A DNA stretch of 64,000 nucleotides, from assembly GCA_946965045.2 (NCBI GenBank), contig OX337242.1, forward strand, positions 2,790,001-2,854,000. Reading direction: 5' to 3'. This document shows positions 16,563 to 54,324 of the stretch, piece after piece. The stretch is from Epithemia pelagica (taxonomy: Eukaryota > Protista > Bacillariophyta). The notes beneath the pieces were generated by a model. The model had not been told where the DNA came from. It searched no databases and worked only from the letters and a program-made list of their open reading frames with translations. The position numbers and the translations under genes were made by a program. Position 1 is the first letter of the stretch, and every line of letters starts with the position of its first letter.

Positions 16563-16639
16563 GGCCCTGTGGAACAGAGAATCACACAGTGTGGATGATC
16601 ATTCCAAAAGTCGTGTCGTCTCGTCAAGCTGAGTGGGTA

Positions 16640-16770
16640 CATGAGGCCAATCCTTTACCATCTGCAAAACAAAAGTTGAAGCATGACACGTCGGAAAAAT
16701 GACGTCAAATCCGGGTTGGACGATGCTATGCTGACGTATTGGGGCTTTCTGATTGGCCTCGTTATCCGGA
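16640..16770. promoter_or_regulatory. Putative bidirectional promoter with CCAAT boxes and TGACGTCA/TGACGT sites; empty site for both TE insertions
   Basis: GGCCAATC ~16645, TGACGTCA 16700-16707, TGACGT 16732-16737 and GATTGGC ~16751. It lies between the divergent GT11 start and a GT32-like remnant, and is conserved at 23760-23873 and 43252-43340. Confidence 0.45.
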
Positions 16771-17104
16771 TAGCGGCTTGGCGGAGCCAACAAGGGGAAC
16801 CACACATCGCCCGCCTCGCCAGTAAAAGCACCAAACCGTCGCCCCGCTCGCAGCCAGGCGAACCACCATCTAGCCATCACACATCTCACCACCCTGCTCT
16901 CCGAAACAACAAAAAAGGTCCGCATCGAACACAGCGGTAGCAGATGTCCACAACAAACAACACACCATCGCCACCCAACAGCAACACCACACGTCTATCC
17001 AGCACGACGAAAAGCGCACGGACCTTCGTCCCAGCAGCGCCACCTCGCCTCTTTTATTGGGCACCAACAACCATCCAAACGAGTAGTATTGTAGTCACCT
17101 TTTG

Positions 17105-17340
17105 TGTAGTACCGAAATGCCGGAATGGATTCACCAATGCCTCCTCTTGACACTCCAAGTGCTGCACCAGGACCCCGAGTTGAAAGAGGCTGGGTCCACC
17201 TTTTGACAATACTTGGAGTCCCACAATGGATTTTGGCAAACCGGCCACACGGCGGGAATGTGTTGTGGGGCGAGTCCAGTCCCAGAGATGAGAGTGCGCG
17301 GAACGTGCACCACGGATTTGACTCTGTGTGTTTGGAGGCC
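17105..17340 (+). pseudogene. 3' fragment of a GT32 paralogue (copy A)
   Basis: CSTEMPEWIHQCLLLTLQVL...F*QYLESHNGFWQTGHTAGMCCGASP aligns with the GT32 C-terminus; TGA at 17204-17206. Confidence 0.75.
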
Positions 17341-22045: not shown

Positions 22046-23671
22046 CTACAACAAGGCATTGGATTGTTGTTGCAAGGATTTCCCAGTCATGGTTCCGGAC
22101 GGAGAAACGAGTTGGTGGCAAAACTCTCGCCGGGGAGAATCCCGCATCGAGGGGTCCAGGGCCAAAAAGGTGCAGTTTTGTTCCACCAAGCCGCCCCCAG
22201 CGACGGACGAGTCCAAGTTGTCCTTGCGGTTGTTTGGAGTATTCGTTGGATGGTACTGAAACCAGGTAGATGCGGAAGCCTGGTCTCCCATGGTTTCCGT
22301 CAAATAGTACCAGCGTACCGTCGAGGCATTGCCCAACAACCCCGCCAGTTGGGCAAACGTCGATTGGGCCACACCCACCAATGTGGCTTTCGTCGACAGG
22401 GCCAAACAAAAGTCTTGAATGCCCGATTGATTTTGAATCACTCGTACCATCCATCCCTGGTCTGTTAACGCTTGCGCATAGGGCGTCGCTGTGCTCGGAT
22501 ACCGACTGATAATCGCCATTTGGTTAGCACTGTGGGTGTGATTGGTGTTGTTGTTGTTGTTGCCCAATGGAGATTGGGACAAGTTTGGCGGCGGCGGTGG
22601 ACCAAACAAGTGTTGCGCGGTATCGGCTGGCGTCAGTTCCCGATACCGCTGTTTCGGGTTGGAGAGGTTGATTCGTTCAAATTCCGTCACAAAGTTGCGA
22701 AAATGAAAGACCGTCTCATTGTCATTGGGTCGCTGGGCACAACACGACGGATCAATGCGGAACCAGTGCCGAAGATCATAGTACAACTCTTGATCTTGCA
22801 AAATAACAGAGGGGGACAGGAATTTGGACACGGAGAGAAAGGGGATCGAGTAGGGATTGTCGTCGGGAACCGAGGATGGCAAGGGAACGTCGTGGGTGGC
22901 CTTGTTTGGAATTCCACGTGAGCGCTCTTGTTGTTGTTGAGCCTCGTATTGTTCCTTCAACAAGTCTCGCAGCAACTGAATTTGAGACGGCGTTTTGACA
23001 TTGTACAACTCTTTGACGCCCTTGTTTCGTCCCGAGAGCCACTTGGTTTGCGCCTCTTGAATCGGCCCAAAGTGTTCCGAGTCATTGTCCGAACCGACAA
23101 AGTCCATGGTCCGCACTCCCGGAAAGCACTGGGGGAGAACCTTGTGGGCCTTGTGTGCCAGGACGCGAATGACAAGACCGGGCACGGCCGCTTCCAGAGT
23201 GTGTTGAATCTGCCGCGCATGCGCCAAAAACAGGAGCTGATTGCTCATTTGACCCTTCATGCGAACGACCATGGTCAAGGTTCGATGGAACCACGGAGTC
23301 GACGTCGACTCGCCCGTGGAGGAGAAACTGCTGTTGGTCGACTGTTGGATGGTTCCTCGTTCGTCTGGTTGTTTCTTGGTTGGCTGGACGTTGTGATTTG
23401 ATTGGACCAAAGGATGTGTCAGTTGTTGTTCTCCTCGTTTGGATGGTTGGACATAGATTCGCAGGTCCATGTTAACATATCCGTACAACTCCAACAGCAA
23501 GAACACTGCCGCCACCGACACCACCACCAATGCTGCTTTTCGTACGGCTGGTAGAGTCACTCGTCGCTGCCCTTGTTGTTGTGGTGTGGTACTACCAGGA
23601 GTTTTTGGATTCTGTGGTTGCGACCAACGATGCCGCATTTGAGAGGACGCGGAGAATGGGAAGGACGACAT
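22046..23671 (-). CDS. GT11-like protein, copy 2
   Basis: Intact 541-aa ORF, near-identical to 14904-16562 and offset by 7142 bp. Confidence 0.65.
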   Translation of the reverse strand: MSSFPFSASSQMRHRWSQPQNPKTPGSTTPQQQGQRRVTLPAVRKAALVVVSVAAVFLLLELYGYVNMDLRIYVQPSKRGEQQLTHPLVQSNHNVQPTKKQPDERGTIQQSTNSSFSSTGESTSTPWFHRTLTMVVRMKGQMSNQLLFLAHARQIQHTLEAAVPGLVIRVLAHKAHKVLPQCFPGVRTMDFVGSDNDSEHFGPIQEAQTKWLSGRNKGVKELYNVKTPSQIQLLRDLLKEQYEAQQQQERSRGIPNKATHDVPLPSSVPDDNPYSIPFLSVSKFLSPSVILQDQELYYDLRHWFRIDPSCCAQRPNDNETVFHFRNFVTEFERINLSNPKQRYRELTPADTAQHLFGPPPPPNLSQSPLGNNNNNTNHTHSANQMAIISRYPSTATPYAQALTDQGWMVRVIQNQSGIQDFCLALSTKATLVGVAQSTFAQLAGLLGNASTVRWYYLTETMGDQASASTWFQYHPTNTPNNRKDNLDSSVAGGGLVEQNCTFLALDPSMRDSPRREFCHQLVSPSGTMTGKSLQQQSNALL

Positions 23672-24296
23672 GGTCCTGTGGAACAGAGAATCACACAGTG
23701 TGGACGATCATTTGTGTTGTGTTATTATTTTACTTTCGGTCGTCGCAAGGTGAGTGGCTACATGAGGCCAATCCTTTACCATCTGCAAAACAAAAGTTGA
23801 AATATGACGTCAAATCCGGGTTGGACGATGCTATGCTGACGTATTGGGGCTTTCTGATTGGCCTCGTTATCCGCACCGTACCCCTCAGGTCAAGAAGGGA
23901 CCGACGGACGAGCGACGAAGATGAATGACGTGTCCCTCAACGAGATTGCACCTCCACGTCAGGATTGGTTGGGTGAAGTTGGAAGATACTTCCCCAACCA
24001 AATACAAAACGAACAAGAAGTTCATAGGTTGACGAAAGGACGCAACTGCAGTGAATACACGGATCTGATCACCCAGTGTTTTGTTATGGTTTTTTCTTTT
24101 GGCTTCTTTTTCCTCCCTGTCGACCGTGCCAACCACTCTTACGTCTTGTGTTCTTCTTTTTCACCATGAAGTTTGATTGGGTTGGGACTTCGGAATCCTT
24201 GCCCTCTGTGGGGTCGTCAGGTGAGGCGTAATTGGGTCGGGGCAGCGAATCTGTCTCCGTCAGGATTGTACTATTGCCTCCCATACTTCCAAGAAG

Positions 24297-31653: not shown

Positions 31654-32513
31654 GAATGGAGAAACAAGAGAGGAGTAAGAGCAAGGACAACAAGAAGCAG
31701 CGAAGCAGAGAAGACGAAGACAAGAAAGAGAAATTACTTGCATGACCGAAATGGGGGAATTGGCTCGGCTCAACTCTTCGGAGTTGGCCTAGCTCGCTTG
31801 TCGTTGCCAGCTTGCCTGATGATAATCATGTATGAAATCCTCCAAACGTTGACCAGGGCTTGGCAGCTCATGGAATATACGGCAGAGAACTTGTGAAGAT
31901 ATTTCGAGGTGTCTCTGGCTCCGTACTGGGGTTTGGATTGGGATGGATTCTTGATTGGATTCACACTCGCGCGTAACGGACAGACCATGCCAGGATCCGA
32001 GTCCTGACATGACTGGAGCGAATCACGATTCTCGCCTACCTTGGGAAAGGAGGGTGGAGGGCATAGCCCCCCCCCCCCATAGTATTGGTATGCATAGTAA
32101 TAAATGTGTTATATCTATTTGGATGTGAGTTTGCACACGAGATCGTTGAGGAAGCACGACCGTTGGATGAGAAGCGAGGAACTAGTACCGGATAGCGGCT
32201 TGGCGGAGCCAACAAGGGGAACCACACATCGCCCGCCTCGCCAGTAAAATCACCAAACCGTCGCCCCGCTCGCAGCCATGCGAACCACCATCTAGCCATC
32301 ACACATCTCACCACCCTGCTCTACAAAAAAGGTCCGCATCGAACACAGCGGTAGCAGATGTCCACAACAAACAACACACCATCGCCACCCAACAGCAACA
32401 CCACACGTCTATCCAGCACGACAAAAAGCGCACGGACCTTTGTCCCAGCGCCACCTCGCCTTTTATTGGGCACCAACAACCATCCAAACGAGTAGTATTG
32501 TAGTCACCTTTTG

Positions 32514-32760
32514 TGTAGTACCGAAATGCCGGATTGGATTCACCAATGCCTCCTCTTGACACTCCAAGTGTTGCACCAGTACCCCGAGTTGAAAGAGGCT
32601 TGGTCCACCTTTTGACAATACTTGGAGTCCCACAATGGATTTTTTTGGCAAACCGGCCACACGGCGGGAATGTGTTGTGGGCGAGTCAAGACCCAGAGAT
32701 GAGAGTGCGCGGAACGTGCACCACGGATTTGACTCTGTGTGTTTGGAGGCCCGGGATCGG
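32514..32760 (+). pseudogene. 3' fragment of a GT32 paralogue (copy B)
   Basis: Homologous to 17105-17340; same TGA at 32613-32615. Confidence 0.7.
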
Positions 32761-33216: not shown

Positions 33217-34437
33217 TCAAGTTCCATCCTTCCCGTCATCACCACGGTGCGTCTTGGACCTTGCGCGTTTACGAGCTGTTGTCGAGGAAGTGAAGGGGGG
33301 AAAATGAGCATCTCCGATGCCCATTCCTTCCCGAAAATGATGCCATCCGTTAAGTTGCTGCTCACAGAGTCGACGAAAACACCACGTATGCTTGTCCAGT
33401 AGTGGTAATGTCGCACAGGTAGGGTTCTGAGATCCACCAATCACGGCAACATGGTTGGCAACAGTCACCATACTGCAACCACTGCGAGAATTCGCGAATG
33501 GTGGGAGATTCCACACGTGGTTGCGGTGCGTATCCAAGACTTGCACGGTTGAATCGGCTCGTCCTCCCGCCACCACCAGACAAGATCCCACGGCAACCAC
33601 AGCACAAGACCTTCGTGCATTGGAAAGCACCAAATCAGAATGAGTGGTCCAGGTGGGTGAGAAAAAAATGAACGTCGAGCCAGTTTCCTTTTCAGTCTCA
33701 TCACTGTCAAAGGGTGTTGTGCCGTCCAAATACTCCACCAAGTCAAGATTGCCATGCTCATTACGGCCTCCAACGACAAAGATGCGGTGACCAATAACCG
33801 CACTGGCACATAATTGTCGAGGAACAGCCATGGATGGTCCAGCAGTGACAATGTGATTGTTGGTATCAATAATATCCACTGACGACAAAAATTGATCGTT
33901 GTAATAGCCACCCATTACAACGATGTATCGGTTGTGAACCGCGACAGCACAACATCCTGATCGTCCCATTGATAAGCGACATGTCAATGTTGTCCAATGA
34001 CTATCCTGAGTGGTGGTGGTTGTTAAGGATGATCGAAGCAAATCATTGCCATCAATTCGCTCAATACAATCCAAAGGTCCTCGCCTGTATCCTCCCATCA
34101 CGTACACGCTGCCATTGCAAGCAACAGCGGCATGATCGTCACGTTTCTTGCTCATGGGTGGTCCTTCTCGCCATTGCTTGTCTGGGTCTGATAGATTCAA
34201 TACAAGAACTGAATCCGTGGTACCTTGGCCTTGTTGCCATCCTCCCAACACGACGACCGTCTGCCCCCTGTTATTGTTGCTATCGTTTTCCGTATCGGGA
34301 TGGTCCAGTACGACCGAAGCATGATCCAAACGCCATCCACCCTGGAGAGGAGGCCAGTCCTCGAAGTTCCATTGTGCTGTCTCTTCCAAAAGAACAAGGC
34401 CCGACTGCCATGCCCGTTCTTTCAGTGTTCTTGTCAT
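33217..34437 (-). CDS. Kelch-repeat protein, copy 3
   Basis: Intact ORF from the conserved ATG at 34437. Confidence 0.9.
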   Translation of the reverse strand: MTRTLKERAWQSGLVLLEETAQWNFEDWPPLQGGWRLDHASVVLDHPDTENDSNNNRGQTVVVLGGWQQGQGTTDSVLVLNLSDPDKQWREGPPMSKKRDDHAAVACNGSVYVMGGYRRGPLDCIERIDGNDLLRSSLTTTTTQDSHWTTLTCRLSMGRSGCCAVAVHNRYIVVMGGYYNDQFLSSVDIIDTNNHIVTAGPSMAVPRQLCASAVIGHRIFVVGGRNEHGNLDLVEYLDGTTPFDSDETEKETGSTFIFFSPTWTTHSDLVLSNARRSCAVVAVGSCLVVAGGRADSTVQVLDTHRNHVWNLPPFANSRSGCSMVTVANHVAVIGGSQNPTCATLPLLDKHTWCFRRLCEQQLNGWHHFREGMGIGDAHFPPFTSSTTARKRARSKTHRGDDGKDGT

Positions 34438-35638
34438 GGTCACGGCGCTGACAAGAAATTGCGGCACGAGAAGTATTTGTGAGCAACGCGTGGAAGCTTT
34501 GCCGCGTGTGGAAAAGGTGTGCCTGTCCTGCGTACGATGGTGAAGGGCATTCAATCGCACATAGAATTCATGACACGCCCCCAAAAGTATCTTCTGTGCT
34601 GCGCAAGATACGACGACATAACAAGAGGTCCTTTTGTACGATGAAGAGGTCCACAGATCGACAATCCCTAATTTCCAAGTCATCTCGTCCACGCCATTGA
34701 TGGAACACCATAATTCCCTTGGTCCTATACAGTCTGTTCACAACGACGACAACAACAACAACAACAGAGAGAGTGGTCTTCGTTTGATGCAATGAACCGA
34801 AAAAGTGATCTTCTTGATGCGAGTGGGCATCATATAGTGAAGGAAGCAAGGCCACAAGTACAACTACACAAAAACTAGAATCCGACGACATGATGGACCA
34901 GAAGGAGCATGATGTCATTCATCCCATTGTGACTCGCTTCCCGTGCTGCATTAGCAGCAGACGCCTGCATTCGTCTTCTTTGGATCGCTTTCGAAAATGT
35001 CACATGGATGTGGTTGGATCGCAAGGGCTGGTCCCCTATGCCATTATTGATACCAACTCCATCAATCATCTTTATGGGAGAGCCAAAACCGTCTCGTGCC
35101 GTCTTCGCCAGTTGTCAGCAATGCTCGCGCATGTGGTCCAATGATTGTGGCAGACGCATATCGCACTGGCTCAATGGCCTCCGTTCGCCAAGGTGGGTCT
35201 CAGGACCGGTGGCTGCTACATTTTGCCAATGGGTGATGTTGTCGTCTTGATTGGAAACCGCAAGAGCTCAAGGAACCAAAAGTGGACCGGGGGAGTCGTC
35301 GCTTGGATCCACCTGGCGTCGAGAACGTACAAGAGTTTTGTGTGTCCGGTTCCGGCAAAACGACCTACAGCCAAAATAGAGCCAACCTAGATGAGGATAT
35401 CACGACAAACAAGAGAAGCCAGTCTCGCGAATGAACAATTAATCAACATTCCTGTCCTGCTCGTGACAAGGCTTTGTTGGATGAGTTCGTGTTGCTTGTT
35501 GTCGCTTTCTGATTCTGCTGCTTAGTTCGAGGTACAAAGATTGTCGTGGCGGAGTGGTGATGGAACCAAGGTCACAAGCACAACTACATAGAGACGAGAA
35601 TCCGACGACATGATGGACCAGAAGGAACATGATGTCAT

Positions 35639-36220
35639 TCATCTCATACTGACTCGCTTCCTTGTTGCATTATAGCAGCAGACGCCTGCATTTGAGGAGA
35701 CAAAGCAGCAAGAGGACGAACAAGAGTAAATGTTAGGAGCGATCACGAAGAGAGGAACGTTCATCGGCAAGATGGAATGACCGAAATCAAAGGAGAAGAC
35801 GGCGACAACCATGGTCAAGGTTCGATGGAACCACGGAGTCGACTCGTTGCCCGTGGAGGAGGAGAAACTGCTGTTGGTCGACGGCTGGATGATGGTTCCT
35901 CGTTGTTCTTGTTGTTGGTTCTTGGTGGCCGGAACGTTGTGATTTGATTGGACCAAAGCTTGTGGCGGTGGTTGTGGTTCCTGGTTTGGTTGTGGTTCTC
36001 CTCCTCGTGTTGGTGGGAAATATTTCCACAGGTCCATTAGGAGGAACACTGCCACCACCGACACCACCACCAATGCGTTTCGTACGGCTGGTAGAGTCAC
36101 TCGTCGCTGCCCTTGTTGTTGTGGTGTGGTACTGCTAGGAGTCGTTTGACTTGGATTCCTAGTTTGTGACCAGCGATGCCGCATGTGAGCGGACGCGGAG
36201 AAGGATGGGAAGGACGACAT
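35639..36220 (-). pseudogene. 5' fragment of a GT11-like gene (signal anchor and stem) fused to unrelated sequence at ~35810
   Basis: MSSFPSFSAS...PWFHRTLTMVV matches the GT11 N-terminus, then switches into the antisense of the LRR-remnant region. Confidence 0.75.
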
Positions 36221-37046
36221 GGTCCTGTGGAACAGAGAATCACACAGTGATGAGAGGAGAGGATGATGCCCGTCGTTTCTGTCGTCTCGTCTAGAGCTGA
36301 GTGGGTACATGAGGCCAATCCTTTACCACTTGCAAACAGGGTGTGGAAGTTGGAAAATCAGCCATTAGACTTAACTTCCCAACTAATAATTCATTAGACA
36401 GTTTACTGTGATGCGACTTGTACCCACTAGTTAGTTCAACATGTATGATTAAATTAACTTAAACTAATCAAATCACAAAACCACGATACAGAATGAACTT
36501 GCAACTAATAGTCTAACACGACTTAGGTACTAACTTGACTAGATTAAATATGGTTCCAATGAAGAACCTGCCACTTAACTTAGACTAACTTTGAAAGTCG
36601 TAGTTTCTTTTCTGAGTCTGCAACTAGACTAAGCAAGTCCAAGTTGCAACTTTGCCCCTTGTAATTAAACTTCATCCCTCTGTCACCTCCATAGTTACAA
36701 CTATTAGTTGCAACTTCTTTGTTGTCGTAGTCACAAACAACAACTTTTATTCAGAGGAACCATTCACTCTTATCTGTTTCTACGTATTTATTCACACTCT
36801 TCCTGCACATATTTACCAATATCACTCCCAGAGGAGTAGAACGTTCACGACTCACGACAGAGGTTCAACCAACACTCACAACTCACAACTCTCAACCTCT
36901 CAACATTCACCAATCCACTGTCACCTGTCACCTTTACCTCTGTTCCTTTCCATCAACGACACAACCTTCAGTTTTCCCGCCCTTCTCATTTCTCTGCCAC
37001 TATTATTTCCCCATCCCCAACCCCATGCATCTAATATTCAAGTACA

Positions 37047-37996
37047 ATGGAAGCATCAGATGACCGTACAATCAACCTTGATGTGACTTGTCACCAAGTC
37101 ATCACTGTGACCCATATTCCAATGTCGTTCATGACCATGATGCTAGAGGACTCAACTTTGTTAACCACTCCCTTGGAAAAGGCGACACAAGACTTGGCAA
37201 TGGAGAACATAAAAGATGTGGTGTTGCTGTGGCTTACCCGGTACAATGGAAGTCTGCACTACCAACAAGTCGACTATCCATCCAACACAAGCCACCCTTG
37301 TTTATCTCCAAGTCGCATGTCATTCGAAAGCTTACTGAACACTGTCTGTCGAATAGTGTTTACGGGTCTGTATTCCCAAGAAGATGACTCATTCCAAGTC
37401 ACATACGAGATGAACCCCCCCCCACCGACGACCTCCCCTTCATCTCCATTGAAGGAAAATGCCGACCAATATTTTCTTTGCCTTGCTCCAATGGTCTCAG
37501 AGCTTTTCAAAAATTCAATGCCGATTACCATCAGCAAAACAACTACACTAAACTTTCCGTGGAATGGAATCTTCTAACCTGGATGACCCGACACAATGCC
37601 AGAATCCAGGTTAGAAATTCCTTTGACCTACGGACGGAGTGTCCTATTTGTATTAGTCCAAGCATCGACATCGTTGTTGAGGACATTGTTGCGCATACTA
37701 AGAAGAGCACGAAGGAGGATGACCCTTACTCAATGAAACTGGATACAACGACGTCCCCTCCTCCTATTGATACAAGTCCTCCATCAACTCCAGTTGCCAA
37801 AGCTTCTCAATCTACCATGGGCCCAAATAGCAACAACGCTTCTACTTCTGTCACCCATGAATATTGGGCTTCTTCTCCCGTCATTGATGAATATTGGACC
37901 AAGCGACAATTTTCCCCCACTGCCCATGTCTTGACTCGGCAAAGAAAAACTGTTCTCTGCCATGCTTTATTGCAATCATGTGCCGCCAAGGAATAG
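37047..37996 (+). pseudogene. Unknown N-terminal region probably contiguous with the glycosylase (frameshift ~37505, TAG 37994)
   Basis: The 37478-37996 frame equals the 38018 frame with only one TAG between them. The 37047 frame switches near CTTTTCAAAAATTC. Confidence 0.45.
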
Positions 37997-38017
37997 ATAG
38001 TCTATGGCGACAGACAC

Positions 38018-38890
38018 ATGCCTGGGACACCTGCAATTACCAAACCTGTCATGACCAGAATGTTTCGCCCTTCCATCCCCATTAGAAACCAATCCACAAT
38101 TGATTCCCGGCTGTTTTTACTTGATAATCTTTCCCATTTACGTCGGTATTTCCTTCAGTCTGGTTTGGAAGCCCCCAGAGACACATGGTCCGAATGGATT
38201 ACCAACAATATGTCGGAATATGAAGACTCTGACCCAACCTTCATGTGTCTCATTGTTATCTTGATGAGCTCGGCCACATCAGATCAAAGTCTCTCACAAG
38301 TGATCCCTCGCTTATTCCAATCGGGCATCACTAGTGCACAAGGAACAATTGAAGTGTCTACATATTTTGGGATGGATGTTTTCTGTAGTTTGTTTGCAGA
38401 AACAGGACAGTATCGTGTCAATGCGGAACGCATAGTCAACGCCGCGGACTATTTTGTCCAGCGACACAAAGGTCGCATTCCTAAAGACATTTCCCTTACT
38501 GAGCTTATGACCTTACCTGGAATTGGCCACAAGACGGGAACAATCATTCTACAAACGGCATTTGGCCGGACGGAAGGAATTCCCTCAGATATTCATGTTA
38601 TCCGATCAACTAAGGTTCTCAATTGGACGGAATCTCATATCAATGACGGCATGGAATGCTCTTTGAACCTTCAATCATGGCTTCCTAAAGAACGATGGGA
38701 GGAGATCAATCCTTTATTTGGTTCTCTAGGACAACTACTTAACAAATCACAGACCAGAAGCAAGTGCCAAGAACAAATGGAGTCTTTTATTGTGGCTCAC
38801 TCTCATGACCAATCCAAATCTAAATCTCCAGCGAATCTTCGCCATCTCAAGTATTTCTTTCTGCAGTTGATAAAAGAATATACTAAATGA
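38018..38890 (+). CDS. Endonuclease III (Nth)-like HhH-GPD DNA glycosylase/AP lyase lacking the 4Fe-4S cluster
   Basis: LMTLPGIGHKTGTIILQTAFG..GIPSDIHVIR matches Nth LPGVGRKTA..LNTAFG..VDTH.R, with catalytic Lys and Asp. Also LQSWLPKERWEEINPLFGSLGQ. No C-x6-C-x2-C-x5-C after GQ. Confidence 0.88.
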   Translation: MPGTPAITKPVMTRMFRPSIPIRNQSTIDSRLFLLDNLSHLRRYFLQSGLEAPRDTWSEWITNNMSEYEDSDPTFMCLIVILMSSATSDQSLSQVIPRLFQSGITSAQGTIEVSTYFGMDVFCSLFAETGQYRVNAERIVNAADYFVQRHKGRIPKDISLTELMTLPGIGHKTGTIILQTAFGRTEGIPSDIHVIRSTKVLNWTESHINDGMECSLNLQSWLPKERWEEINPLFGSLGQLLNKSQTRSKCQEQMESFIVAHSHDQSKSKSPANLRHLKYFFLQLIKEYTK

Positions 38891-38992
38891 CTGTCAATAT
38901 ATTGTATTTACCAAAATGCACTGCGATTATGGATGTATAGTTTCCGTGACGTTTCTTCCATTGTCACCTTCAGTGACGTTCGTGGTCGGAGA

Positions 38993-41900
38993 TCAACTGG
39001 TACCGTCATTGTCCGCACTTGAGACTTCCTTCTCTGCAAGTCTTGAGCTTCTTCTCGTTGGCGAGTCGTTTGGGGTTGGGGGTGGTTTGCGATTGTCTTT
39101 CTTGCGTGGTGTTCTAACCACAGTTCTTGCGAGTGCCTCAGAGAGTGAATTCTGTTTCGTCCGTTTCCTTCCTTTTTGAATAGTTGAAGAGGCTTTACGT
39201 TTCCCACTATCTCCTTTCGTGCCTTCATTGGCTTTTGCAACGGGCAGACTAGCAACAGTCTTCTCCAACGCGGTTGGTTGAATGAGTTCATTCTTTCTTT
39301 CCTGGATGGCTTCTTTTAACGCCGTGTTGGAATCTTCCTTGTCTTCGTCATCGTCGTAAGGAGCAACAACTTTTCGATCCAAAGCCTCTAGTTGGTCGTC
39401 ATCTCGTGGATCGTCTACCAGATCAACCAATTCGACGTCGTCACATGTCGCATCGCTCACAACTGTCTTCTTATCAACCTTTTTGACCGACTTGAACTTG
39501 TAACTTGTTTCCGCCGTTATGCCGTGGGCACCAATAGTTCCGGACAGTTCGTAGAGTTCCAGCTTCGACGTTGCTCGTAGTACCGTTTCCATCCGAGTCA
39601 TATCGGATTGTGTTGGTGTGGCTTTTTCCAGTGGGACAACAGGAACTTGTGTTCCTGCTGCCAGGGTGCGTTGTTGTGCGGTCTGTTGTACCTGACTGAC
39701 TTCTTCCCCTTTAGATTCCTAGCTGAGATCTATCACCTTCTTTGCTTGGCGGCCACTGGCTGCCTTTTTTCGTCGGAGGTCGCGCCTTGTTTGAGTAGTT
39801 TTTCATTCTTGACAATCTCAGAGCGCACCTCCCTTGTAATACTTTCCATAGTGCGCATTTCAAAGTTCTTGTCTAGCTGGCGTCTCATTAAGGGATTCCT
39901 ATCCATGAACGACGACCGAGAGAACACGCGTTCCTGGAATGCGTTTGTCGCAGGTTTCGATATCCAAATCAAGGCACTAGGAAAGAGTTTGGGGAATAGC
40001 ATCTTGTTGTCGGACCACCATTTCAAGACGTCAAAATATTTCCCAACGACATGGAAATAGTGTTCCGTACAGGCCAACTTGAATTCTTGTCGTTTTTCAG
40101 GGTTCCACGAACCAAATAGTTTCAGAAATGCGGCAGTGGGATACTGGCGAATCAAGTCCTCCCAGGATCCATGAACAACGTTCTCGCAGAATTCGAGATA
40201 GCGTCCGAACTGTTCATCACACATCTTGTATAGCTTGGCTCTATCAACTTGGTCATCTGTACTGGTACTTGTCGCCGTCGCCTCCATCAGTGCAGCATTT
40301 TCTTTCTCCTTGGTGATGCGATGTGTCTTGAAGATGTTAAAGCAGTCCATTACATTCAAGACAGCTTTTGGGACTGAAGACTCTTCCTCTTCGTCCTCGA
40401 TGATCTCCACAGGTGTACTTTCCTTGTGTTGTTCACGTTCCTGCTGATTCGACTTGGACTGGGGATTGGTGCCATTCTTCTTTGGCTGCGAGAACTTGCG
40501 GATAATGTCCATCACAAATTCTTTCCGAATCCGTTTAAGACTCTCATCGTCGTAAACCTTTATGGTTTTCAGTATGTTGGGACCATAAGATGCAAGGAAA
40601 GGATGTCCACACATGGCGTGTTCAGCGTGGGAGTCATGGCCTTCCTGAATGTAGTTTGTATATTCCACAAGTACTCGCTCGATCAACAATTGACTCTTTT
40701 CTGACAATTTGTCGTATGTTACAATGTCTCGATACGATTGAAGCTTGGCGATGGTGAGACTGGCATCCCATGGGCGTGCATTAGGCCCAGTAACAGTCAA
40801 CACGGGCACTCCCTTATCTTTCATAACTTCCACACAATGCTTACTGGTGAAGATTTCGAGCAATGAACAAGCCGATGCAGAAGGGTCGTCAACTTGGAGT
40901 GACATGGAGACTTGTTTGAGTGGGGCCAAGATTCCCTCGAATTCGGCCAAGAGCTGCCAGTCCTCTTCAGAGGGATAATGTTTAATGAATTCGTCGTCCT
41001 TGTACTCAAATTTCTCTTTTGTATACATATCCGTTACAAATTTGTTCCGGAATAGGTCATGAAAGGTAATGATGCAGCCTCCAACACGGGTTGTATTCGG
41101 CATAGAGACTTTGATGACCTTCCTCCCATGTTTTAGGGCGTAGGAACGTAGCTTTTCAAATCTTTTGGCACGCGAACTCATCATCCATGCTGCAAATTTG
41201 AAGAATTTTCTATAAACAGTCATGAATTCCTCGTTACTGTCCACCACTTCGCCTTTTTTTCCGGACTGCCAGACCTGTGGAGTGTTTCAAGATCAGTTCG
41301 GCCCTGTGCATGTCGCACTTGCCGCCTGTCTTATTACCCACTATATACTTTCCAGCCAACACGGCGGAGTTCGTGTTGTCATTCACGGAGGCAGAGAGGT
41401 CTTGTTGCGTAAAGCCGACAGCGTTGAGGATTGATGAGGTGTGGTCGGCTACTTGTTTTGCTGTATGGCCCTTTGTTGAGCAAAGGCCAATCGGGAGTCT
41501 GTAAGATTTACAGTTCCGAGGATCGGTGAACATCAAACAAACCCCAAGGACATCCTTGTCATTTCCCTGCCAGATGTTGTGTGTTATCGTAGAAAAGGCG
41601 ATGGGTTTGTTGCATAGATCATGGTACGCTTGTCGTACGTTTTCTCCAAGTTCCGTAGCGGTCTTGAGAAAACCATTGTAGGACTCCAATCTCATCCGAG
41701 TGATTGCTTTGTTGCTTATGGAACAGTCCTTTTCCTTGAGCTTTGGGGCGTTGGCAATTGCACACTTAAGAAGATCTCTAAACGATTCCTTCTCAACAGT
41801 TGATGCCGGGAAACCACAGTCATTCACGAACTTATAAATTGACTGATGAAACATTACTCTGGCATCTTGTTTGCTAACCATTGTGCCAGAATACATGGAA

Positions 41901-42655
41901 ATGGGTTGTTGAGTAGGGTCGGTTGCAACAGAGGCAGTATCTTCCACGACTTCGGGGTGGTATTTACCGAAGTGTGTGCTGATGTTGGACGAAAGGCCTC
42001 TGCCAAGACCAAGGAGACATTTGTCGAGACTAACAGTCGGGTCGTCGAAGCAATGTGGACAAACAACAAGCTTCTTTACAATGGAATGATAGCCATTGTT
42101 CATTTCTTTGTCTTCATCAGAAGCTGACTCTAACAATTGCAGACACGAAAATAAACCTGGCATTTTCCCCAAATTGACAGCGGGGTTTGATTTTAAGGTC
42201 TTCTTCGTGCTGGTCAATTTCTTGAAGTTCAGGTAACGAACTTTTCCAAAGAACGAATTTTGGAAATTTCGAAAGAGCTTCTTCGGAGGTGGACAAAACG
42301 AGACATGTGATTTCTCTTGTTTGATTTCATCCTTTTGGCTTTGTGTCAAGGGTCCCTCGTCCGTAGGAGCAGGAGCAGCAACTTGTTGAGAGTTGTCTTC
42401 ATTGTTGGCTGTTGTAGGAGGCGCCTGGTTTTCATTTTCTCTTTCATTGGTTGTTGTCGGTGGGTTCATGGGTTCTTCATTGTTGTCGTCACCTCCAGTT
42501 GCTGACGATAGTGGAGCTTCTTTGGAGGATTGAGATGACTGCTGTTGATTCTTTCCTTGGGGAGCCATGGCATACATGAATGTCGCTGATGAAAGACTGG
42601 AAACAGCAGGGGAGTTCAAATCTACTTCAATGTCCTCGATTGGCAACAAAGACAT
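38993..42655 (-). pseudogene. hAT transposase (BED finger, DDE core, hATC dimerisation domain, charged tail), split by two homopolymer frameshifts and one stop
   Basis: CPHC...HFGKYH (BED); ITHNIW (first D as N); VNDN; CDMH; PNTTR; VLKWWSDNKMLFPKL...PATNAFQERVFS. Shifts at T7 41254-41260 and T6 39765-39770; TAG at 39719-39721. Confidence 0.88.
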
Positions 42656-43682
42656 GTGCTTTCAACCAGAGATTGGTTGTTTGATTCCGACAGTGTCAAC
42701 TGGAAAAATCACACCTCATTCGTGTGCTGTAACGCTTCAATAAGCCACAACAGAGGTGAAGAGATTGTGTGTTGGGTTCAGTGTTAAGAGGTAAGAGGTA
42801 AGGGGCCAGTACCGATTATATCTTGTTGACTGTGTTTGTTGCTGTAGGATAGTGCCAAGTGACCAAGTGTCGACAGTCGACACTGACACTAGTTGCAATG
42901 AAGTAAAATTACAACTTGATTTGGAGAATTTAGTTCTCATCTTGAGACTTGCAATTAGACTTCAGACTTCGAGTCACTAAGTGGAGACATGTAACTTGAT
43001 TGAACTATGTGAGAAAATTGCAACTTGGATAATTACATTGGTGTGTGCCAATGTTCCGGTAATAAGAGCTTGTAAATAACTAAGTTGGATGGGTCCAAGT
43101 CAAGTTCGATGAAAAATGTGAGCGATTTGACTTTGTGCAAAAAGTTCGTTTGGGAAAGGCTAGTAATGTGATTTGATTTGTGAAATTATGGTGAAAAAGT
43201 TCAAAAGTTGCAGAACTTAGAAAATTTTTCGCGAGTGACTTCCACACCCTGCTTGCAAAACAACAGCTGGAGCATGACACGTCGGAAATATGACGTCAAA
43301 TCCGGGTAGGCCGATCGCTATGCTGACGTATTGGGGCTTTCTGATTGGCCTCGTTATCCGGATATCGGCCAACCAACAAACTCCACACATCGCCCGCCTC
43401 GCCGGTAAAAGCACCTCCGCTGCCAACCGTCGCCCCGCTCGCAGCCAGGCGAACCACCATCTAGTACCATCACACATCTCACCACCCTGCTCTACGAAAC
43501 AACAAAAAAGGACACAGCGGCACCAAGCCCACGTCAAACGACACACCATCGCCACCCAAAAGCAACACCAAAAACGTCCATCCAGCACGACGAAAAGCGC
43601 ACGGACCTTTGTCTCAGCGCCACCTTGCCTTTTATTGGGCACCAACAACCATCCAAACGAGTAGTATTGTAGTCACCTTTTG

Positions 43683-43920
43683 TGTAGTACCGAAATGCCG
43701 GATTGGATTCACCAATGCCTCCTCTTGACACTCCAAGTGTTGCACCAGTACCCCGAGTTGAAAGAGGCTTGGTCCACCTTTTGACAATACTTGGAGTCCC
43801 ACAATGGATTTTTTTGGCAAACCGGCCACACGGCGGAACTGTGTTGTGGGGCGAGTCAAGTCCCAGAGATGAGAGTGCGCGGAACGTGCACCACGGATTT
43901 GACTCTGTGTGTTTGGAGGC
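43683..43920 (+). pseudogene. 3' fragment of a GT32 paralogue (copy C)
   Basis: Homologous to 17105-17340; same TGA at 43782-43784. Confidence 0.7.
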
Positions 43921-44386: not shown

Positions 44387-45607
44387 TCAAGTTCCATCCT
44401 TCCCGTCATCACCACGGTGCGTCTTGGACCTTGTGCGTTTACGAGCTGATGTCGAGGAATTGAAGGGGGGAAAATGAGCATCTCCGATGCCCATTCCTTC
44501 CCGAAAATGATGCCATCCGTTAAGTTGCTGCTCACAGAGTCGACGAAAACACCACGTATGCTTGTCCAGTAGTGGTAATGTCGCACAGGTAGGGTTCTGA
44601 GATCCACCAATCACAGCAACATGGTTGGCAACAGTCACCATACTGCAACCACTGCGGGAATTCGCGAATGGTGGGAGATTCCACACGTGGTTGCGGTGCG
44701 TATCCAAGACTTGCACGGTTGAATCGGCTCGTCCTCCCGCCACCACCAGACAAGATCCCACGGCAACCACTGCACAAGACCTTCGTGCATTGGAAAGCAC
44801 CAAATCAGAATGAGTGGTCCAGGTGGGTGAGAAAAAAATGAACGTCGAGCCAGTTTCCTTTTCAGTCTCATCACTGTTAAACGGTGTTGTGCCGTCCAAA
44901 TACTCCACCAAGTCAAGATTGCCATGCTCATTACGGCCTCCAACGACAAAGATGCGGTGACCAATAACCACACTGGCACATAATTGTCGAGGAACAGCCA
45001 TGGATGGTCCAGCAGTGACAATGTGATTGTTGGTATCAATAATATCCACTGACGACAAAAATTGATCGTTGTAATAGCCACCCATTACAACCATGTATCG
45101 GTTGTGAACCGCGACAGCACAACATCCTGATCGTCCCATTGATAAGCGACATGTCAATGTTGTCCAATGACTATCCTGAGTGGTGGTGGTTGTTAAGGAT
45201 GATCGAAGCAAATCATTGCCATCAATTCGTTCAATACAATCCAAAGGTCCTCGCCTGTATCCTCCCATCACGTACACGCTGCCATTGCAAACAACAGCGG
45301 CATGATCGTCACGTTTCTTGCTCATGGGTGGTCCTTCTCGCCATTGCTTGTCTGGGTCTGATAGATTCAATACAAGAACTGAATCCGTGGTACCTTGGCC
45401 TTGTTGCCATCCTCCCAACACGACGACCGTCTGCCCCCTGTTATTGTTGCTATCGTTTTCCGTATCGGGGTGATCCAGTACGACCGAAGCATGACCCAAA
45501 CGCCATCCACCCTGGAGAGGAGGCCAGTCCTCGAAGTTCCATTGTGCTGTCTCTTCCAAAAGAACAAGGCCCGACTGCCATGCCCGTTCTTTCAGTGTTC
45601 TTGTCAT
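44387..45607 (-). CDS. Kelch-repeat protein, copy 4
   Basis: Intact ORF from the conserved ATG at 45607. Confidence 0.9.
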   Translation of the reverse strand: MTRTLKERAWQSGLVLLEETAQWNFEDWPPLQGGWRLGHASVVLDHPDTENDSNNNRGQTVVVLGGWQQGQGTTDSVLVLNLSDPDKQWREGPPMSKKRDDHAAVVCNGSVYVMGGYRRGPLDCIERIDGNDLLRSSLTTTTTQDSHWTTLTCRLSMGRSGCCAVAVHNRYMVVMGGYYNDQFLSSVDIIDTNNHIVTAGPSMAVPRQLCASVVIGHRIFVVGGRNEHGNLDLVEYLDGTTPFNSDETEKETGSTFIFFSPTWTTHSDLVLSNARRSCAVVAVGSCLVVAGGRADSTVQVLDTHRNHVWNLPPFANSRSGCSMVTVANHVAVIGGSQNPTCATLPLLDKHTWCFRRLCEQQLNGWHHFREGMGIGDAHFPPFNSSTSARKRTRSKTHRGDDGKDGT

Positions 45608-46739
45608 GGTCACGGCGCTGACAAGAAATTGCGGCACGAGAAGTGTAATAGAGCAACGCGTGGGCGTTTGGAAACGGTGTGCCTGTCCTGCGTACGATGG
45701 TGAAGGGCATTCAATCGCACATAGAATTCATGACTAGCCCCAATGGTATCAAGACGACATTTGTGATGAAGAGGTCCTTTTGTATGATGAATAGGTCCAC
45801 AGAAGGAAGCAAGGCCACAAGTACAACTACACAAAAACAAGAATCGACGACATGATGGACCAGAAGGAGCATGATGTCATTCATCCCATTGTGACTCGCT
45901 TCCCGTGCTGCAATAGCAGCAGACGCCTGTATTCGTCTTTTCTTTGGATCGCTTTAGAAAATGTCACATGGATGTGGTTGGATCGCAAGGGTTGGTCCCC
46001 TATGCCATTATTGATACCAACTCCATCAATCATCTTTTTTGGAGAGCCAAAACCGTCCCGTGCCGTCTTTGCCAGTTGTCAGCAATGCTCGCGCATGTGG
46101 TCCAAAGATTGTGGCAGACGCATATCGCACTGGCTCAATGGCCTCCGTTCGCCAAGGTGGGTCTCAGGACCGGTGCTACATTTTGCCAATGGGTGATGTT
46201 GTCGTCTTGATTGGAAACCGCAAGAGCTCAAGGAACCAAAAGTGGACCGGGGGAGTCGTCGCTTGGATCCACCTGGCGTCGAGAACGTACAAGAGTTTTG
46301 TGTGTCCGGTTCCGGCAAAACGACCTACCGCCAAAACAGAGCCAAACTTGATGAGGATTTCACGACAAACAAGAGAAGCCAGTCTGGACAATAAACAATC
46401 AATCAACTTTCCTGTCCTGCTCGTGACAAGGCTTTGTTGGATGAGTTCGTGCTGCTTGTTGTCGCTTTCTGATTCTGCTGCTTATTAGTTCGAGGTACAA
46501 CGATTGTCGTGGCGGAGTGGTGACGGAACCAAGGTCACAAGCACAACTACACAGTGACGAGAATCCGACGACATGATGGACCAGAAGGAACATGATGTCA
46601 TTCATCCCATTCTGACTCGCTTCCTTGTTGTATTATAGCAGCAGACGCCTGCATTTGAGGAGACAAAGCAGCAAGAGGACGAACAAGAGTACATGATAGG
46701 AGCGATCACGAAGAGAGGAACGTTCATCGGCAAGATGGA

Positions 46740-52842: not shown

Positions 52843-54324
52843 TTATGATGAGTCATTGGATCCAAGAGTGTTGTTCTTCTTGTTTTGTGCCAGGAGGAGG
52901 ACGGCTGCCATGTCCGTGTGATAGGCGGGTGATCGTACATAGTCTGTCAAGGGGCCGATTTGCTTTTTGAGCCAAAAACACTGGGTCCGAACGTGGTGCA
53001 CATTCATCATACTCGGGTCTTTGGGAGCCGCACCATAACACATTCCAGCAGTCTTGCCGGTTTTCCAATATCCATTGTGGGGACGCAATTGTCGTTTAAA
53101 CTGGAACCAGGCCTCTTCAAACTGGGCGTCCCGCAATACTTGGAGTGTAAACATGCATTGGAAGATAAAATAAGGCATTTCGGTACACACATCCTGTGAC
53201 TGGTCGGGAGTGGTTTGCACCATGTGCTCCAGGTGGTTGGTATAGGCTTGCATCCACCGTTGCATCACGAGACTTTGGGGTCGTGCTACCATGAAATAAC
53301 TGTCCAGCATGCGTGCCTGGCCGGCCAGTTGTAGGTACGGTTTCTTTGGCGGGGACGATCTGTCTCGAATATGACAGGTTTTATATTTTTGGAGTTGACG
53401 ACGGCTCAAAGCACCGGCCTTGCTAAAAAAGGGGGGCACAAAAAAGTCGACATGGCTGGATGGAATCAAGTGGTCCACATAGTCATCCAAGGGTCGCATG
53501 GGACAAATGGAGGTATCGGCATAGACACCCCCGTACAAGGCCATGAGTTCGGTGCGCAGCAAGTTTCCCAGTTTGACGGGGCAGATTCGTGTACCGTTGG
53601 TCCTGTGGTTGTTGTTGCCGTCGATTGTTCGAGGAATGCTGGCCAACCGAGCAAAGTTGGGAGCCAGTGTCATGGCTGTGGTCCGATTGAGGATGCGAAC
53701 ATCCCACGTGGGATGCAAAATCTGCCAGGCTTGGACGCAGGCATAGTCGGCCTGATATTTGTTGGGTGTCGAGTGGGGGCCACCAATGTCCGCCAAATGG
53801 TCCAGTCCTCGATCCCAATACAACCAAACGATTTTGGGGATACCCTGAATCGTTGTGTTGGTGGTAAGAGGTGGTGCAATTGTAGGAACGGGCAAGGAGG
53901 AGGAGACGGAGGAGGAGGAAGAAAGAGAAGAACCCGGCGAGGATCCAATCGAAACTGGTCGGCCTCTTGCTGGACCAGGAGCGTCGGCGTGGTGAGTGGA
54001 CGTGCTTGAGTCGTTGGTTTTGTTGGAGTCGATCGATCCCACCAAGGGATCCTTCCTTGTCGACAACAATTGAACGGTGCTTCGGGAGGAGTTGACCAAA
54101 CTTGCTGAATGATCGAGTCCATCCTCCTCCTCTTCCGTTGTATTGGACGAGGAAGACGACTGAAACAACACATCTCTGTGTGGAGTCAACTTTACAATAT
54201 TGCATATGGACGTCCACATCAAGAGTGTTGAGAATAGGAGTGCCACTTTCAGGATGGTCGGCCGTTTGGAAACTCGCAAGATCCAGGGCATGGTTCGATC
54301 GTCGTGAGATGCCGAATGCCCCAT
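52843..54324 (-). CDS. GT32/capsular polysaccharide synthesis-like glycosyltransferase, diverged second full copy
   Basis: Signal anchor; IPKIVWLYWDRG; LLRTELMALYGGVYADTSIC. Confidence 0.8.
   Translation of the reverse strand: MGHSASHDDRTMPWILRVSKRPTILKVALLFSTLLMWTSICNIVKLTPHRDVLFQSSSSSNTTEEEEDGLDHSASLVNSSRSTVQLLSTRKDPLVGSIDSNKTNDSSTSTHHADAPGPARGRPVSIGSSPGSSLSSSSSVSSSLPVPTIAPPLTTNTTIQGIPKIVWLYWDRGLDHLADIGGPHSTPNKYQADYACVQAWQILHPTWDVRILNRTTAMTLAPNFARLASIPRTIDGNNNHRTNGTRICPVKLGNLLRTELMALYGGVYADTSICPMRPLDDYVDHLIPSSHVDFFVPPFFSKAGALSRRQLQKYKTCHIRDRSSPPKKPYLQLAGQARMLDSYFMVARPQSLVMQRWMQAYTNHLEHMVQTTPDQSQDVCTEMPYFIFQCMFTLQVLRDAQFEEAWFQFKRQLRPHNGYWKTGKTAGMCYGAAPKDPSMMNVHHVRTQCFWLKKQIGPLTDYVRSPAYHTDMAAVLLLAQNKKNNTLGSNDSS

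What the first reader, a model, noticed from the sequence alone, without database searches (positions are those of the whole stretch)
36337..43251. hAT transposon carrying its own HhH-GPD DNA glycosylase
Within intact TIRs and TSD there are just two convergent genes: the transposase and an intronless Nth-like glycosylase. The glycosylase keeps the catalytic Lys and Asp, lacks the Fe-S cluster, and has SSATSD where Nth has the DNA-intercalating Gln (S[AS]Q[AT][TK]D), implying altered substrate choice. The same superfamily includes the 5mC-excising DEMETER/ROS1 and the T:G-repairing MIG/MBD4. Hypothesis: a transposon-encoded base-excision anti-silencing or anti-deamination system, or an enzyme that processes hAT hairpin intermediates. 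I know of no described hAT family with this cargo.
Basis: partly seen in the sequence, partly recalled or inferred. Interest (0 to 1): 0.9.

Follow-up and report, generated by a model that had tools for sequence, protein, structure and literature searches.

The report
hAT transposon with own DNA glycosylase
This is a decaying copy of a cut-and-paste (hAT) jumping gene whose family always carries, besides its transposase, a roughly 600-residue enzyme derived from the DNA-repair glycosylase endonuclease III; I found no paper describing this cargo, and it may let the element remove silencing marks or damage from DNA.

Summary
The element is real and its ends are exact. It has a 14-bp perfect TIR and an 8-bp TSD. 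A paralogous empty site in the same window carries one copy of the 8-mer. AGTTGCA repeats occur only near the ends.

It holds a hAT transposase and, convergent with it, an Nth/NTH1-derived HhH-GPD gene. That gene keeps the catalytic Lys and Asp, lacks the Fe-S Cys loop, and has SSATSD where Nth has SSQTKD.

- The glycosylase gene is about 612 codons, not 290. Its N-terminal half is a conserved two-module domain with a confident model and no fold match.
- This copy is damaged. The glycosylase gene has a +2 frameshift and a stop codon. The transposase has a -2 frameshift.

The cargo belongs to the family, not to this copy. Eight other TIR-bounded elements or contigs, from one genome assembly and two environmental samples, show the same layout. 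One of them has both genes open (622 and 1293 aa). The glycosylases form one clade apart from canonical NTH. Synonymous sites are saturated while amino-acid change is about 0.4.

Function is untested, and I obtained no RNA data. My best guess is base excision against silencing or decay.

The scan has already found this family many times on other DNA of this genome.

The parts
36329..36336 (.). Left target-site duplication, CTTGCAAA
   Evidence: Identical 8-mer at 43252-43259. The paralogous empty site at 16640-16770 has a single 8-mer.
36337..36350 (+). Left terminal inverted repeat, CAGGGTGTGGAAGT
   Evidence: Perfect 14-bp inverted match to 43238-43251. Sister elements have the same or near-same TIR.
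36351..36940 (.). Left subterminal region with AGTTGCA/TGCAACT repeats, the likely transposase-binding sites
   Evidence: The two terminal 450-bp stretches hold 9 copies of the 7-mer (6 left, 3 right). The interior holds none. Binding itself is inferred.
37047..38890 (+). Glycosylase gene of the family, about 612 codons: N-terminal two-module domain, conserved linker with an RHMPG motif, and C-terminal HhH-GPD domain. It is broken in this copy.
   Evidence: The three pieces are colinear with the full-length relative P0056, 605 aa. The sibling L004 reads through both lesions. Full-length members are 517-715 aa.
37415..37423 (+). Lesion 1: C-run of 9 where the sibling has 7, giving a +2 frameshift in the N-terminal domain
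37994..37996 (+). Lesion 2: in-frame TAA where the sibling and the public DNA contigs have CAA
38018..38890 (+). Open 290-codon remnant, the HhH-GPD (Nth-like) domain. SSATSD at 38267-38284, Lys172 at 38531-38533, Asp191 at 38588-38590. No Fe-S Cys loop.
38993..39601 (-). Acidic and basic low-complexity tail ORF. It is the C-terminal extension of the transposase and is out of frame in this subfamily.
   Evidence: In L002, L095 and L096 the tail lies in the same ORF as the transposase. L004 has the same frame break with an ATGA overlap.
39733..41247 (-). Transposase, C-terminal part (504 codons), with the hAT dimerisation domain at about 39913-40041
   Evidence: Pfam PF05699, E 6e-7. The sibling's intact ORF matches Hermes at the SxxxERxFS region.
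41254..41260 (-). Lesion 3: A7 run where the sibling and most contigs have A9, giving a -2 frameshift in the transposase
41234..42655 (-). Transposase, N-terminal part (473 codons), with a CxxC...HxxxxH zinc-finger-like motif
   Evidence: It aligns with residues 183-467 of the intact 1261-aa L002 transposase at 49% identity. The motif was seen by eye and Pfam gave no hit.
42656..43237 (.). Right subterminal region with AGTTGCA repeats
43238..43251 (-). Right terminal inverted repeat
43252..43259 (.). Right target-site duplication, CTTGCAAA

Best explanation
Shown:
- Window 36337-43251 is one copy of a hAT cut-and-paste transposon.
- Autonomous members of its family encode two proteins on converging strands. 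One is a transposase of about 1000-1300 aa. The other is an accessory protein of about 600 aa.
- The accessory protein has three parts: a family-specific N-terminal domain of two repeated alpha/beta modules, a conserved linker (TR...SRSK...RHxPGxPPKLK), and an endonuclease III/NTH1-derived HhH-GPD domain.
- The HhH-GPD domain keeps the Schiff-base Lys and the catalytic Asp. It has lost the 4Fe-4S loop and the helix-inserting Gln.
- This copy inserted into a promoter-like spacer. It has since picked up three disabling mutations and now looks like a neutrally decaying, at best trans-mobilisable, copy.

Inferred:
- The accessory protein is an active bifunctional glycosylase/AP lyase with changed substrate choice.
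- It removes a modified or damaged base from DNA, most likely 5-methylcytosine or one of its oxidised or deaminated products.
- This would keep element copies transcribable, acting as an anti-silencing device in the way DEMETER/ROS1 act in plants and transposon-borne TET/JBP are thought to act in fungi.
- The N-terminal domain probably provides targeting.
For: Anatomy and mobility:
- Exact TIR and TSD.
- Paralogous empty site.
- End-restricted AGTTGCA repeats.
- A sibling copy at 97-98.7% identity with its own TSD, AACCCGAC.

The cargo belongs to the family:
- Same gene order and orientation inside TIR+TSD in L001, L002, L004, L005, L006 and L096, and on the contigs L003 and L095.
- L096 has both genes as single ORFs of 622 and 1293 aa.
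- L006 and L095 come from other samples.

Constraint:
- 41 clusters (at 50% identity) score at E<=1e-30, and many are full-length at 517-715 aa.
- Lys and Asp are invariant or nearly so.
- pN is 0.36-0.49 against saturated pS.

Origin:
- The nearest solved relatives are NTHL1 and EndoIII.
- The family forms one clade (SH-aLRT 99). Next to it, on a poorly supported node (SH-aLRT 31), lie other proteins of which the few whose C-terminal tails I read lack the Cys loop.

Structure:
- The full model has pLDDT 82.
- The N-domain model has pLDDT 89 and pTM 0.79.

Context for anti-silencing:
- Fungal DNA transposons, hAT included, carry TET/JBP genes (PMC12730594).
- The elements are mildly CpG-poor, with o/e 0.65-0.83 against 0.90 in the flanks.
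Against: - There is no substrate, expression or methylation evidence. The public runs that hold the element look like DNA (flat depth, contigs up to about 500 kb), so I got no RNA data.
- The domain derives from Nth/NTH1, whose usual substrates are oxidised pyrimidines. A profile search of solved structures listed no ROS1, DEMETER or MBD4 at E<=1.
- Loss of the Fe-S loop and of the inserting Gln could also mean weakened or lost catalysis.
- The mild CpG depletion suggests the elements do undergo methylation-linked decay, so any protection is incomplete.
- The transposase and glycosylase trees are too star-like to test co-divergence.
- That the host is a diatom rests on earlier notes only. My one attempt to check it returned unnamed proteins.
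Confidence: 0.5

Rival explanations
1. The glycosylase/AP lyase serves transposition itself. It might process or nick DNA at the donor or target site, for example at flank hairpins, the 8-bp gaps or abasic ends, or recruit base-excision repair there. This would raise transposition success or host survival.
For: The lyase Lys and the Asp are kept. The gene always lies beside the transposase within the element. The family-specific N-terminal domain could dock on the transposase or on element ends.
Against: By established knowledge, studied hAT transposases such as Hermes, Ac and Tol2 need no such partner. hAT chemistry produces no base lesion for a glycosylase to act on. The N-domain shows no profile similarity to the transposase. 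Nothing here tests an interaction.
Confidence: 0.2
2. The enzyme is a mutation-avoidance device rather than a demethylase. It would excise T or U opposite G (deaminated 5mC or C), or oxidised pyrimidines, and so slow the mutational decay of methylated element copies.
For: The domain descends from Nth/NTH1, a repair enzyme. The same superfamily includes T:G glycosylases such as 1kea. Differences between the sibling copies are mostly transitions.
Against: The elements are still more CpG-poor than their flanks. The two sibling copies differ by 41 non-synonymous to 18 synonymous changes plus indels, which looks like plain neutral decay. A freely diffusing repair enzyme would benefit the whole genome rather than the element alone.
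Confidence: 0.15
3. The domain has lost catalysis. It would act as a DNA-binding or regulatory module, for example as a reader of damaged or modified DNA or as a repressor or activator of the element.
For: The Fe-S loop and the inserting Gln are lost, and a large new N-terminal domain and linker have been added.
Against: The Lys, the Asp and the HhH GxG hairpin are invariant or nearly so across sequences that are only 28-50% identical. That pattern is hard to explain without catalysis.
Confidence: 0.1
4. One-off capture: a host NTH1 gene or pseudogene happens to lie inside this single copy and is evolving neutrally.
For: In this copy the gene is indeed broken, and differences from the sibling look neutral.
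Against: The same gene is present in every related element examined that still has coding capacity, including other samples. The family is monophyletic and far from canonical NTH, at 200 bits or more against 127 or less. Long open ORFs persist at 45% identity.
Confidence: 0.02

Closest known systems
hAT superfamily DNA transposons (Ac, Hermes, Tol2)
   Same: 8-bp TSD, short TIR starting CAGGG, subterminal short repeats, and a transposase with the C-terminal hAT dimerisation domain and the ...ERxFS motif.
   Different: It carries a second, conserved gene of about 600 codons converging on the transposase. The transposase is unusually long (about 1000-1300 aa) and has a low-complexity tail.
Endonuclease III / NTH1 (HhH-GPD bifunctional glycosylase-lyases; 7rdt, 1p59, 2abk)
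   Same: Same fold and best sequence match. HhH hairpin, catalytic Lys and Asp in register.
   Different: There is no 4Fe-4S Cys loop; helices replace it. SS[SATN]T[SA]D replaces SSQTKD, so the inserting Gln is gone. An N-terminal domain and linker of about 300 aa have been added. The gene is carried by a transposon.
DNA transposons carrying TET/JBP dioxygenase genes in fungi (Kyakuja-Dileera-Zisupton, hAT7 and others; PMC12730594)
   Same: A cut-and-paste transposon, hAT included, carries a DNA-base-modifying enzyme as a second gene that is thought to counter 5mC silencing.
   Different: The enzyme class differs (glycosylase, not dioxygenase) and so does the host lineage. Here the gene looks inherited vertically within one hAT clade, with no sign of swapping between superfamilies. 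I did not search other superfamilies.
DEMETER/ROS1 5mC glycosylases of plants
   Same: HhH-GPD bifunctional enzymes related to Nth that act in anti-silencing. This is the functional model for my best guess (established knowledge).
   Different: No detectable specific similarity. DME/ROS1 keep the Fe-S cluster and have their own extra domains (from memory). They are host genes.
VANC anti-silencing proteins of VANDAL (Mutator) elements in Arabidopsis
   Same: A transposon-encoded accessory protein that is thought to relieve DNA-methylation silencing of its own family (from memory; compare the preprint listed).
   Different: VANC is not an enzyme of base excision and is unrelated in sequence. The superfamily differs.

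Membership tests
hAT superfamily transposon | 8-bp target-site duplication | tested here: met
   CTTGCAAA on both sides. Single copy at the paralogous empty site. 8-bp TSDs in six sister elements and one with a mismatch.
hAT superfamily transposon | Short terminal inverted repeats | tested here: met
   14-bp perfect TIR CAGGGTGTGGAAGT.
hAT superfamily transposon | Transposase with the hAT C-terminal dimerisation domain (PF05699) | tested here: met
   29.6 bits against a cut-off of 21.4. Hermes match at residues 869-916 of the sibling's ORF, E 0.002.
hAT superfamily transposon | Intact transposase ORF (autonomy of this copy) | tested here: not met
   A -2 frameshift in the A-run at 41254-41260. 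Intact ORFs exist in L002, L004 and L096.
hAT superfamily transposon | BED-type zinc finger and complete DDE triad | tested here: inconclusive
   A CxxC...HxxxxH motif is seen in the N-terminal ORF, but Pfam gave no hit. The catalytic D, D and E were not mapped beyond the ERxFS motif.
HhH-GPD superfamily | HhH-GPD domain with helix-hairpin-helix and catalytic Asp | tested here: met
   PF00730, 29 bits against a cut-off of 26.2. Asp191 aligns with the NTHL1 VDTHVHR Asp. The fold matches 7rdt and 1p59.
Endonuclease III / NTH1 family | Schiff-base Lys in the HhH motif (bifunctional class) | tested here: met
   LPGIGHK aligns with LPGVGPK of NTHL1. The Lys is invariant in A1 and present in at least 90% of A3 rows.
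Endonuclease III / NTH1 family | C-terminal 4Fe-4S cluster loop, Cx6Cx2Cx5C | tested here: not met
   No Cys loop in this ORF or in the family. It is present in the canonical NTH rows of the same tree. Helices take its place in the model.
Endonuclease III / NTH1 family | SSQTKD motif with the helix-inserting Gln | tested here: not met
   SSATSD here, and SS[SATN]T[SA]D across the family, against SSQTKD in canonical NTH.
DEMETER/ROS1 family | Specific sequence similarity to DME/ROS1 glycosylase domains | tested here: not met
   The family profile against all solved chains lists only NTHL1, EndoIII, OGG1, MutY and AlkA-type entries at E<=1. I did not check whether a ROS1 structure is in that copy of the PDB.
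Transposon-encoded anti-silencing systems (functional class) | The accessory protein reduces DNA methylation or silencing of its own element | not testable with these tools
   It needs methylomes and expression data. No RNA run was found.

The most novel reading that the evidence does not exclude
A whole clade of hAT transposons has kept, since before its subfamilies diverged to about 45% protein identity, a self-encoded Fe-S-less Nth-derived glycosylase fused to a previously unseen tandem-repeat domain. This protein would be targeted to the element's own DNA and would excise 5mC or a TET-type oxidation product. That would make it a transposon-borne active-demethylation system in an alga, working alongside the TET/JBP-carrying transposons that a first-stage note, not checked here, reports in the same genome.
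Probability: 0.3. Interest if true: 0.85.

Novelty: new variant of a known kind. Interest (0 to 1): 0.72.

Why it matters
Transposons that carry enzymes acting on DNA bases are rare. They bear directly on how mobile DNA escapes methylation-based silencing. The known cases are TET/JBP genes in fungal transposons and VANC in plant Mutator elements.

A base-excision enzyme carried by a hAT family would be a third route and a mechanistically different one. It is easy to test: express the 622-aa protein and assay it on defined lesions.

It also offers a naturally Fe-S-free Nth derivative with an altered base-contacting motif. That is of interest for glycosylase specificity and as a small scaffold for base-editing tools. 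The N-terminal tandem domain has a confident model and no recognisable fold relative, so it is a candidate new DNA- or chromatin-targeting module.

Tried and rejected
1. RNA evidence. The only runs that hold the element (X1-X3) look like DNA, with flat depth and contigs up to about 500 kb. I therefore have no data on splicing or expression.
2. JGI metagenome contig scans. The first found nothing. The second returned only prokaryotic Nth genes at 24-32% identity.
3. dN/dS between subfamilies. Synonymous sites are saturated, so only pN against pS can be reported.
4. Tree congruence of transposase and glycosylase. The glycosylase tree is star-like, so there is no test.
5. Identity of the N-terminal domain. 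I found no convincing match in any of these:
   - Pfam
   - Atlas features
   - Foldseek against PDB, best E 0.037
   - AFDB clusters
   - VIA-align wide, Z no higher than 4.5, with weak three-helix HTH/Myb-like hits that sit at noise level
   - Atlas shapes, TM no higher than 0.30
6. The idea that the N-domain derives from the transposase's DNA-binding part. hhalign gives probability 0.1.
7. Whether the Fe-S-less sister proteins are also transposon-borne. The neighbours of P0183 and P0186 have no recognisable domains and no similarity to this transposase.
8. Checking the host organism through a kelch gene. It returned only unnamed paralogues.
9. L007, a related hAT in another assembly. It shows only a trace of the glycosylase, E 0.0025 in a tiny search space. 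I treat this as inconclusive.
Full report
**1. The observation**

The inverted repeat found mechanically and read directly is CAGGGTGTGGAAGT. It lies at 36337-36350, with its exact complement at 43238-43251. Each copy abuts the 8-mer CTTGCAAA, at 36329-36336 and 43252-43259. The 14-mer occurs nowhere else in the window without mismatch.

The joined flanks align without a break to a paralogous segment of the same window, 16150-17276, at 84.6% identity over 1169 nt. At the junction that paralogue has a single 8-mer, TCTGCAAA. It is therefore an empty site. It fixes the element's ends and the 8-bp duplication independently of the repeat search.

The 7-mer AGTTGCA or its complement occurs 9 times in the two terminal 450-bp stretches and never in the interior. 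This is the usual look of hAT subterminal binding sites. Element G+C is 0.44 against 0.50 in the flanks.

**2. The genes in this copy**

*Transposase.* On the minus strand, ORFs 42655-41234 (473 aa) and 41247-39733 (504 aa) together match residues 183-967 of an intact 1261-aa transposase from a sister element, with a frame change between them. The second ORF carries the hAT dimerisation domain: PF05699, 29.6 bits against a cut-off of 21.4.

The frame change is a run of 7 A at 41254-41260. The 98.7%-identical sibling copy L004 has 9 A there and a 974-aa open frame.

*Glycosylase.* On the plus strand, ORF 38018-38890 (290 aa) is an HhH-GPD domain. Its best solved relative is human NTHL1, E 8.6e-17.
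- LPGIGHK aligns with LPGVGPK, which holds the Schiff-base Lys.
- SDIHVIR aligns with VDTHVHR, which holds the catalytic Asp.
- The motif is SSATSD where canonical NTH proteins in my tree have SSQTKD.
- The Cys loop those proteins carry is absent.

Upstream pieces 37047-37414 and 37417-37993, together with the domain, are colinear with residues 1-124, 129-296 and 306-551 of P0056, a 605-aa relative. The sibling L004 reads straight through both breaks.

In this copy the breaks are:
- two extra C in a C-run at 37415-37423 (C9 against C7);
- TAA at 37994-37996, where L004 and every public DNA contig laid on it read CAA.

*The tail ORF.* A third minus-strand ORF (38993-39601) is the low-complexity tail of the transposase. 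In L002, L095 and L096 it lies in the same frame as the transposase.

*How safe the lesions are.* Two of the three lesions are length changes in homopolymers, the typical long-read consensus error. Contigs of public runs do contain both length forms at those two places. Those runs may be the reads the assembly was made from, so they are not independent. The stop codon is not of that type, but no contig laid shows it.

*Decay.* Differences from L004 are 41 non-synonymous to 18 synonymous. That is neutral decay since insertion.

**3. The family**

A search of the clustered protein collection with the 290-aa ORF returned its sibling at 98% identity and 15 further proteins at 44-59% identity. Scores then dropped to canonical NTH at about 30%.

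An exhaustive profile search gave 41 clusters at E<=1e-30. About twenty of them are full-length, 517-715 aa, with the glycosylase domain at the C-terminus. On the family profile, members score 200 bits or more and everything else 127 or less.

| Locus | Source | Coordinates | TSD | Note |
|---|---|---|---|---|
| L001 | ERZ21939226 | 6227-13289 | GGTGCAAT | both genes, convergent |
| L002 | ERZ21939226 | 5204-13782 | ATCCCAAA | transposase open, 1261 aa |
| L004 | ERZ21939226 | 5350-12996 | AACCCGAC | sibling of the window copy |
| L005 | ERZ21939226 | 5375-12154 | CACGGGCC | both genes, convergent |
| L006 | sediment metagenome ERZ936015 | 117-6256 | ACTTAAGT | glycosylase ORF of 550 aa |
| L096 | ERZ21939226 | 7445-14225 | CTTGGTGG | both genes open, 622 and 1293 aa |

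L096 is a putative autonomous element. The contigs L003 and L095 (a JGI sample) show the same convergent pair, but I could not delimit ends there. L007 comes from a second assembly and is an old copy with only a doubtful glycosylase trace.

In a tree of 152 domains the family is one clade, with SH-aLRT 99. The clades nearest to it hold other unnamed environmental proteins. The few whose C-terminal tails I read lack the Cys loop. The node joining the nearest of these clades has support of only 31, so that placement is not established. The canonical NTH rows, with SSQTKD and the Cys loop, lie further away.

Among subfamilies, synonymous sites are saturated (pS 0.74-0.87) while pN is 0.36-0.49. 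The Lys and the Asp are invariant in the 13-row domain alignment and present in at least 90% of rows in the full-length one.

It does not hold at family level.

**4. The protein**

An AlphaFold2 model of P0056, built with 23 family sequences, has mean pLDDT 82. The C-terminal half matches NTHL1 and EndoIII. Helices stand where the Fe-S loop would be.

Residues 5-216 form two similar modules, each of a beta-hairpin, helices and a strand. Each module carries an invariant Trp (W59, W174). Modelled alone, this domain reaches pLDDT 89 and pTM 0.79.

I found no convincing fold or family match for it:
- Foldseek against PDB, best E 0.037;
- AFDB clusters, best E 0.17;
- VIA-align, Z no higher than 4.5;
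- Atlas shapes, TM no higher than 0.30;
- no Pfam hit.

It is also unrelated to the transposase by profile comparison.

Between the two halves lies a well-conserved linker, TR...SRSK..I.Y...RHxPGxPPKLK. It is modelled with high confidence despite having no regular secondary structure.

**5. Mechanism**

*Shown.* This is a hAT element. It carries a long-conserved accessory gene with the catalytic signature of a bifunctional Nth-type glycosylase/lyase. That enzyme has an altered DNA-contact motif and no Fe-S cluster.

*Inferred.* The enzyme is active, and its benefit to the element is removal of a silencing mark or its derivatives. I put this at about 0.5 including close variants.

*Rivals.*
- A role in transposition or gap repair (0.2).
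- Mutation avoidance on deaminated or oxidised bases (0.15).
- A non-catalytic role (0.1).

No tool here could test substrate, expression or methylation. The only runs holding the element look like DNA.

**6. Comparison with the literature**

Five full-text searches found no hAT, or any other transposon, described with an HhH-GPD or endonuclease III gene. The nearest described parallel is the set of fungal DNA transposons that carry TET/JBP dioxygenases, a hAT7 group among them (PMC12730594).

**7. Earlier notes of this scan**

The same family was noted and followed up many times on other DNA of this genome. Their conclusion was an old hAT family that always carries an EndoIII-like glycosylase, with no paper found. 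My independent tests agree.

Three word searches of the scan's notes for these points returned nothing relevant:
- the true gene length;
- the tandem N-terminal domain with no fold match;
- the three lesions of this copy;
- the paralogous empty site;
- the end-restricted AGTTGCA repeats.

The label 'diatom' comes from those notes, and I could not verify it.

**8. Verdict**

The 'intact two-gene' description is wrong for this copy. The cargo claim is right for the family. The function is open. I class it as a new variant of a known kind, a DNA transposon with a base-modifying accessory enzyme, with interest 0.72.

Noticed in passing
window 16150-17276, 23265-23873 with 32222-32689, and 35737-36336 with 43252-43859: Three paralogous copies of one spacer or promoter segment. 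One is empty. One was hit by this hAT.
   Followed up: partly
window 11563-13035, 33217-34692, 44387-45637 (kelch); 13271-14740, 52843-54324 (glycosyltransferase): Segmentally duplicated pairs of a kelch-repeat gene and a glycosyltransferase gene. The kelch gene belongs to a very large family: 457 database proteins at E<=1e-20, and the 120 listed are at 63-98% identity, all unnamed ENA entries.
   Followed up: partly
L004:7226-7978: The sibling copy has an insertion of about 750 bp inside its glycosylase gene, flanked by a CATGT repeat, with a 211-aa ORF on the opposite strand. It is probably another small mobile element.
   Followed up: no
window 41254-41260 and 39733-39736: The transposase frameshift sits in an A7/A9 run, a slippage-prone site. 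In this subfamily the transposase stop overlaps the start of the tail ORF as ATGA (seen in L004). Splicing or slippage might join them, but this is untested.
   Followed up: no
L091:3835-14445 (also L092, L093): A 796-aa protein with Fe-S-less HhH-GPD-like regions lies near the hAT family in the tree. In JGI metagenome contigs it sits between ORFs of 1338 aa and about 1312 aa that have no recognisable domains. It may be another unknown element.
   Followed up: partly
L007:5007-12095: A related hAT in a second assembly (ERZ25042306). Its TSD is GATAGGAG/GATAGAAG and its transposase is 30-37% identical. It has only a doubtful trace of the glycosylase, so it is either heavily decayed or a glycosylase-free relative.
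   Followed up: partly
window 36337-43251 and elements in L001, L002, L004, L005, L006: The elements are lower in G+C (0.43-0.46) and in CpG o/e (0.65-0.83) than the surrounding DNA (0.50 and 0.90). This fits some methylation-linked decay.
   Followed up: partly
Pfam gave no hit at E<=0.05.
   Followed up: partly
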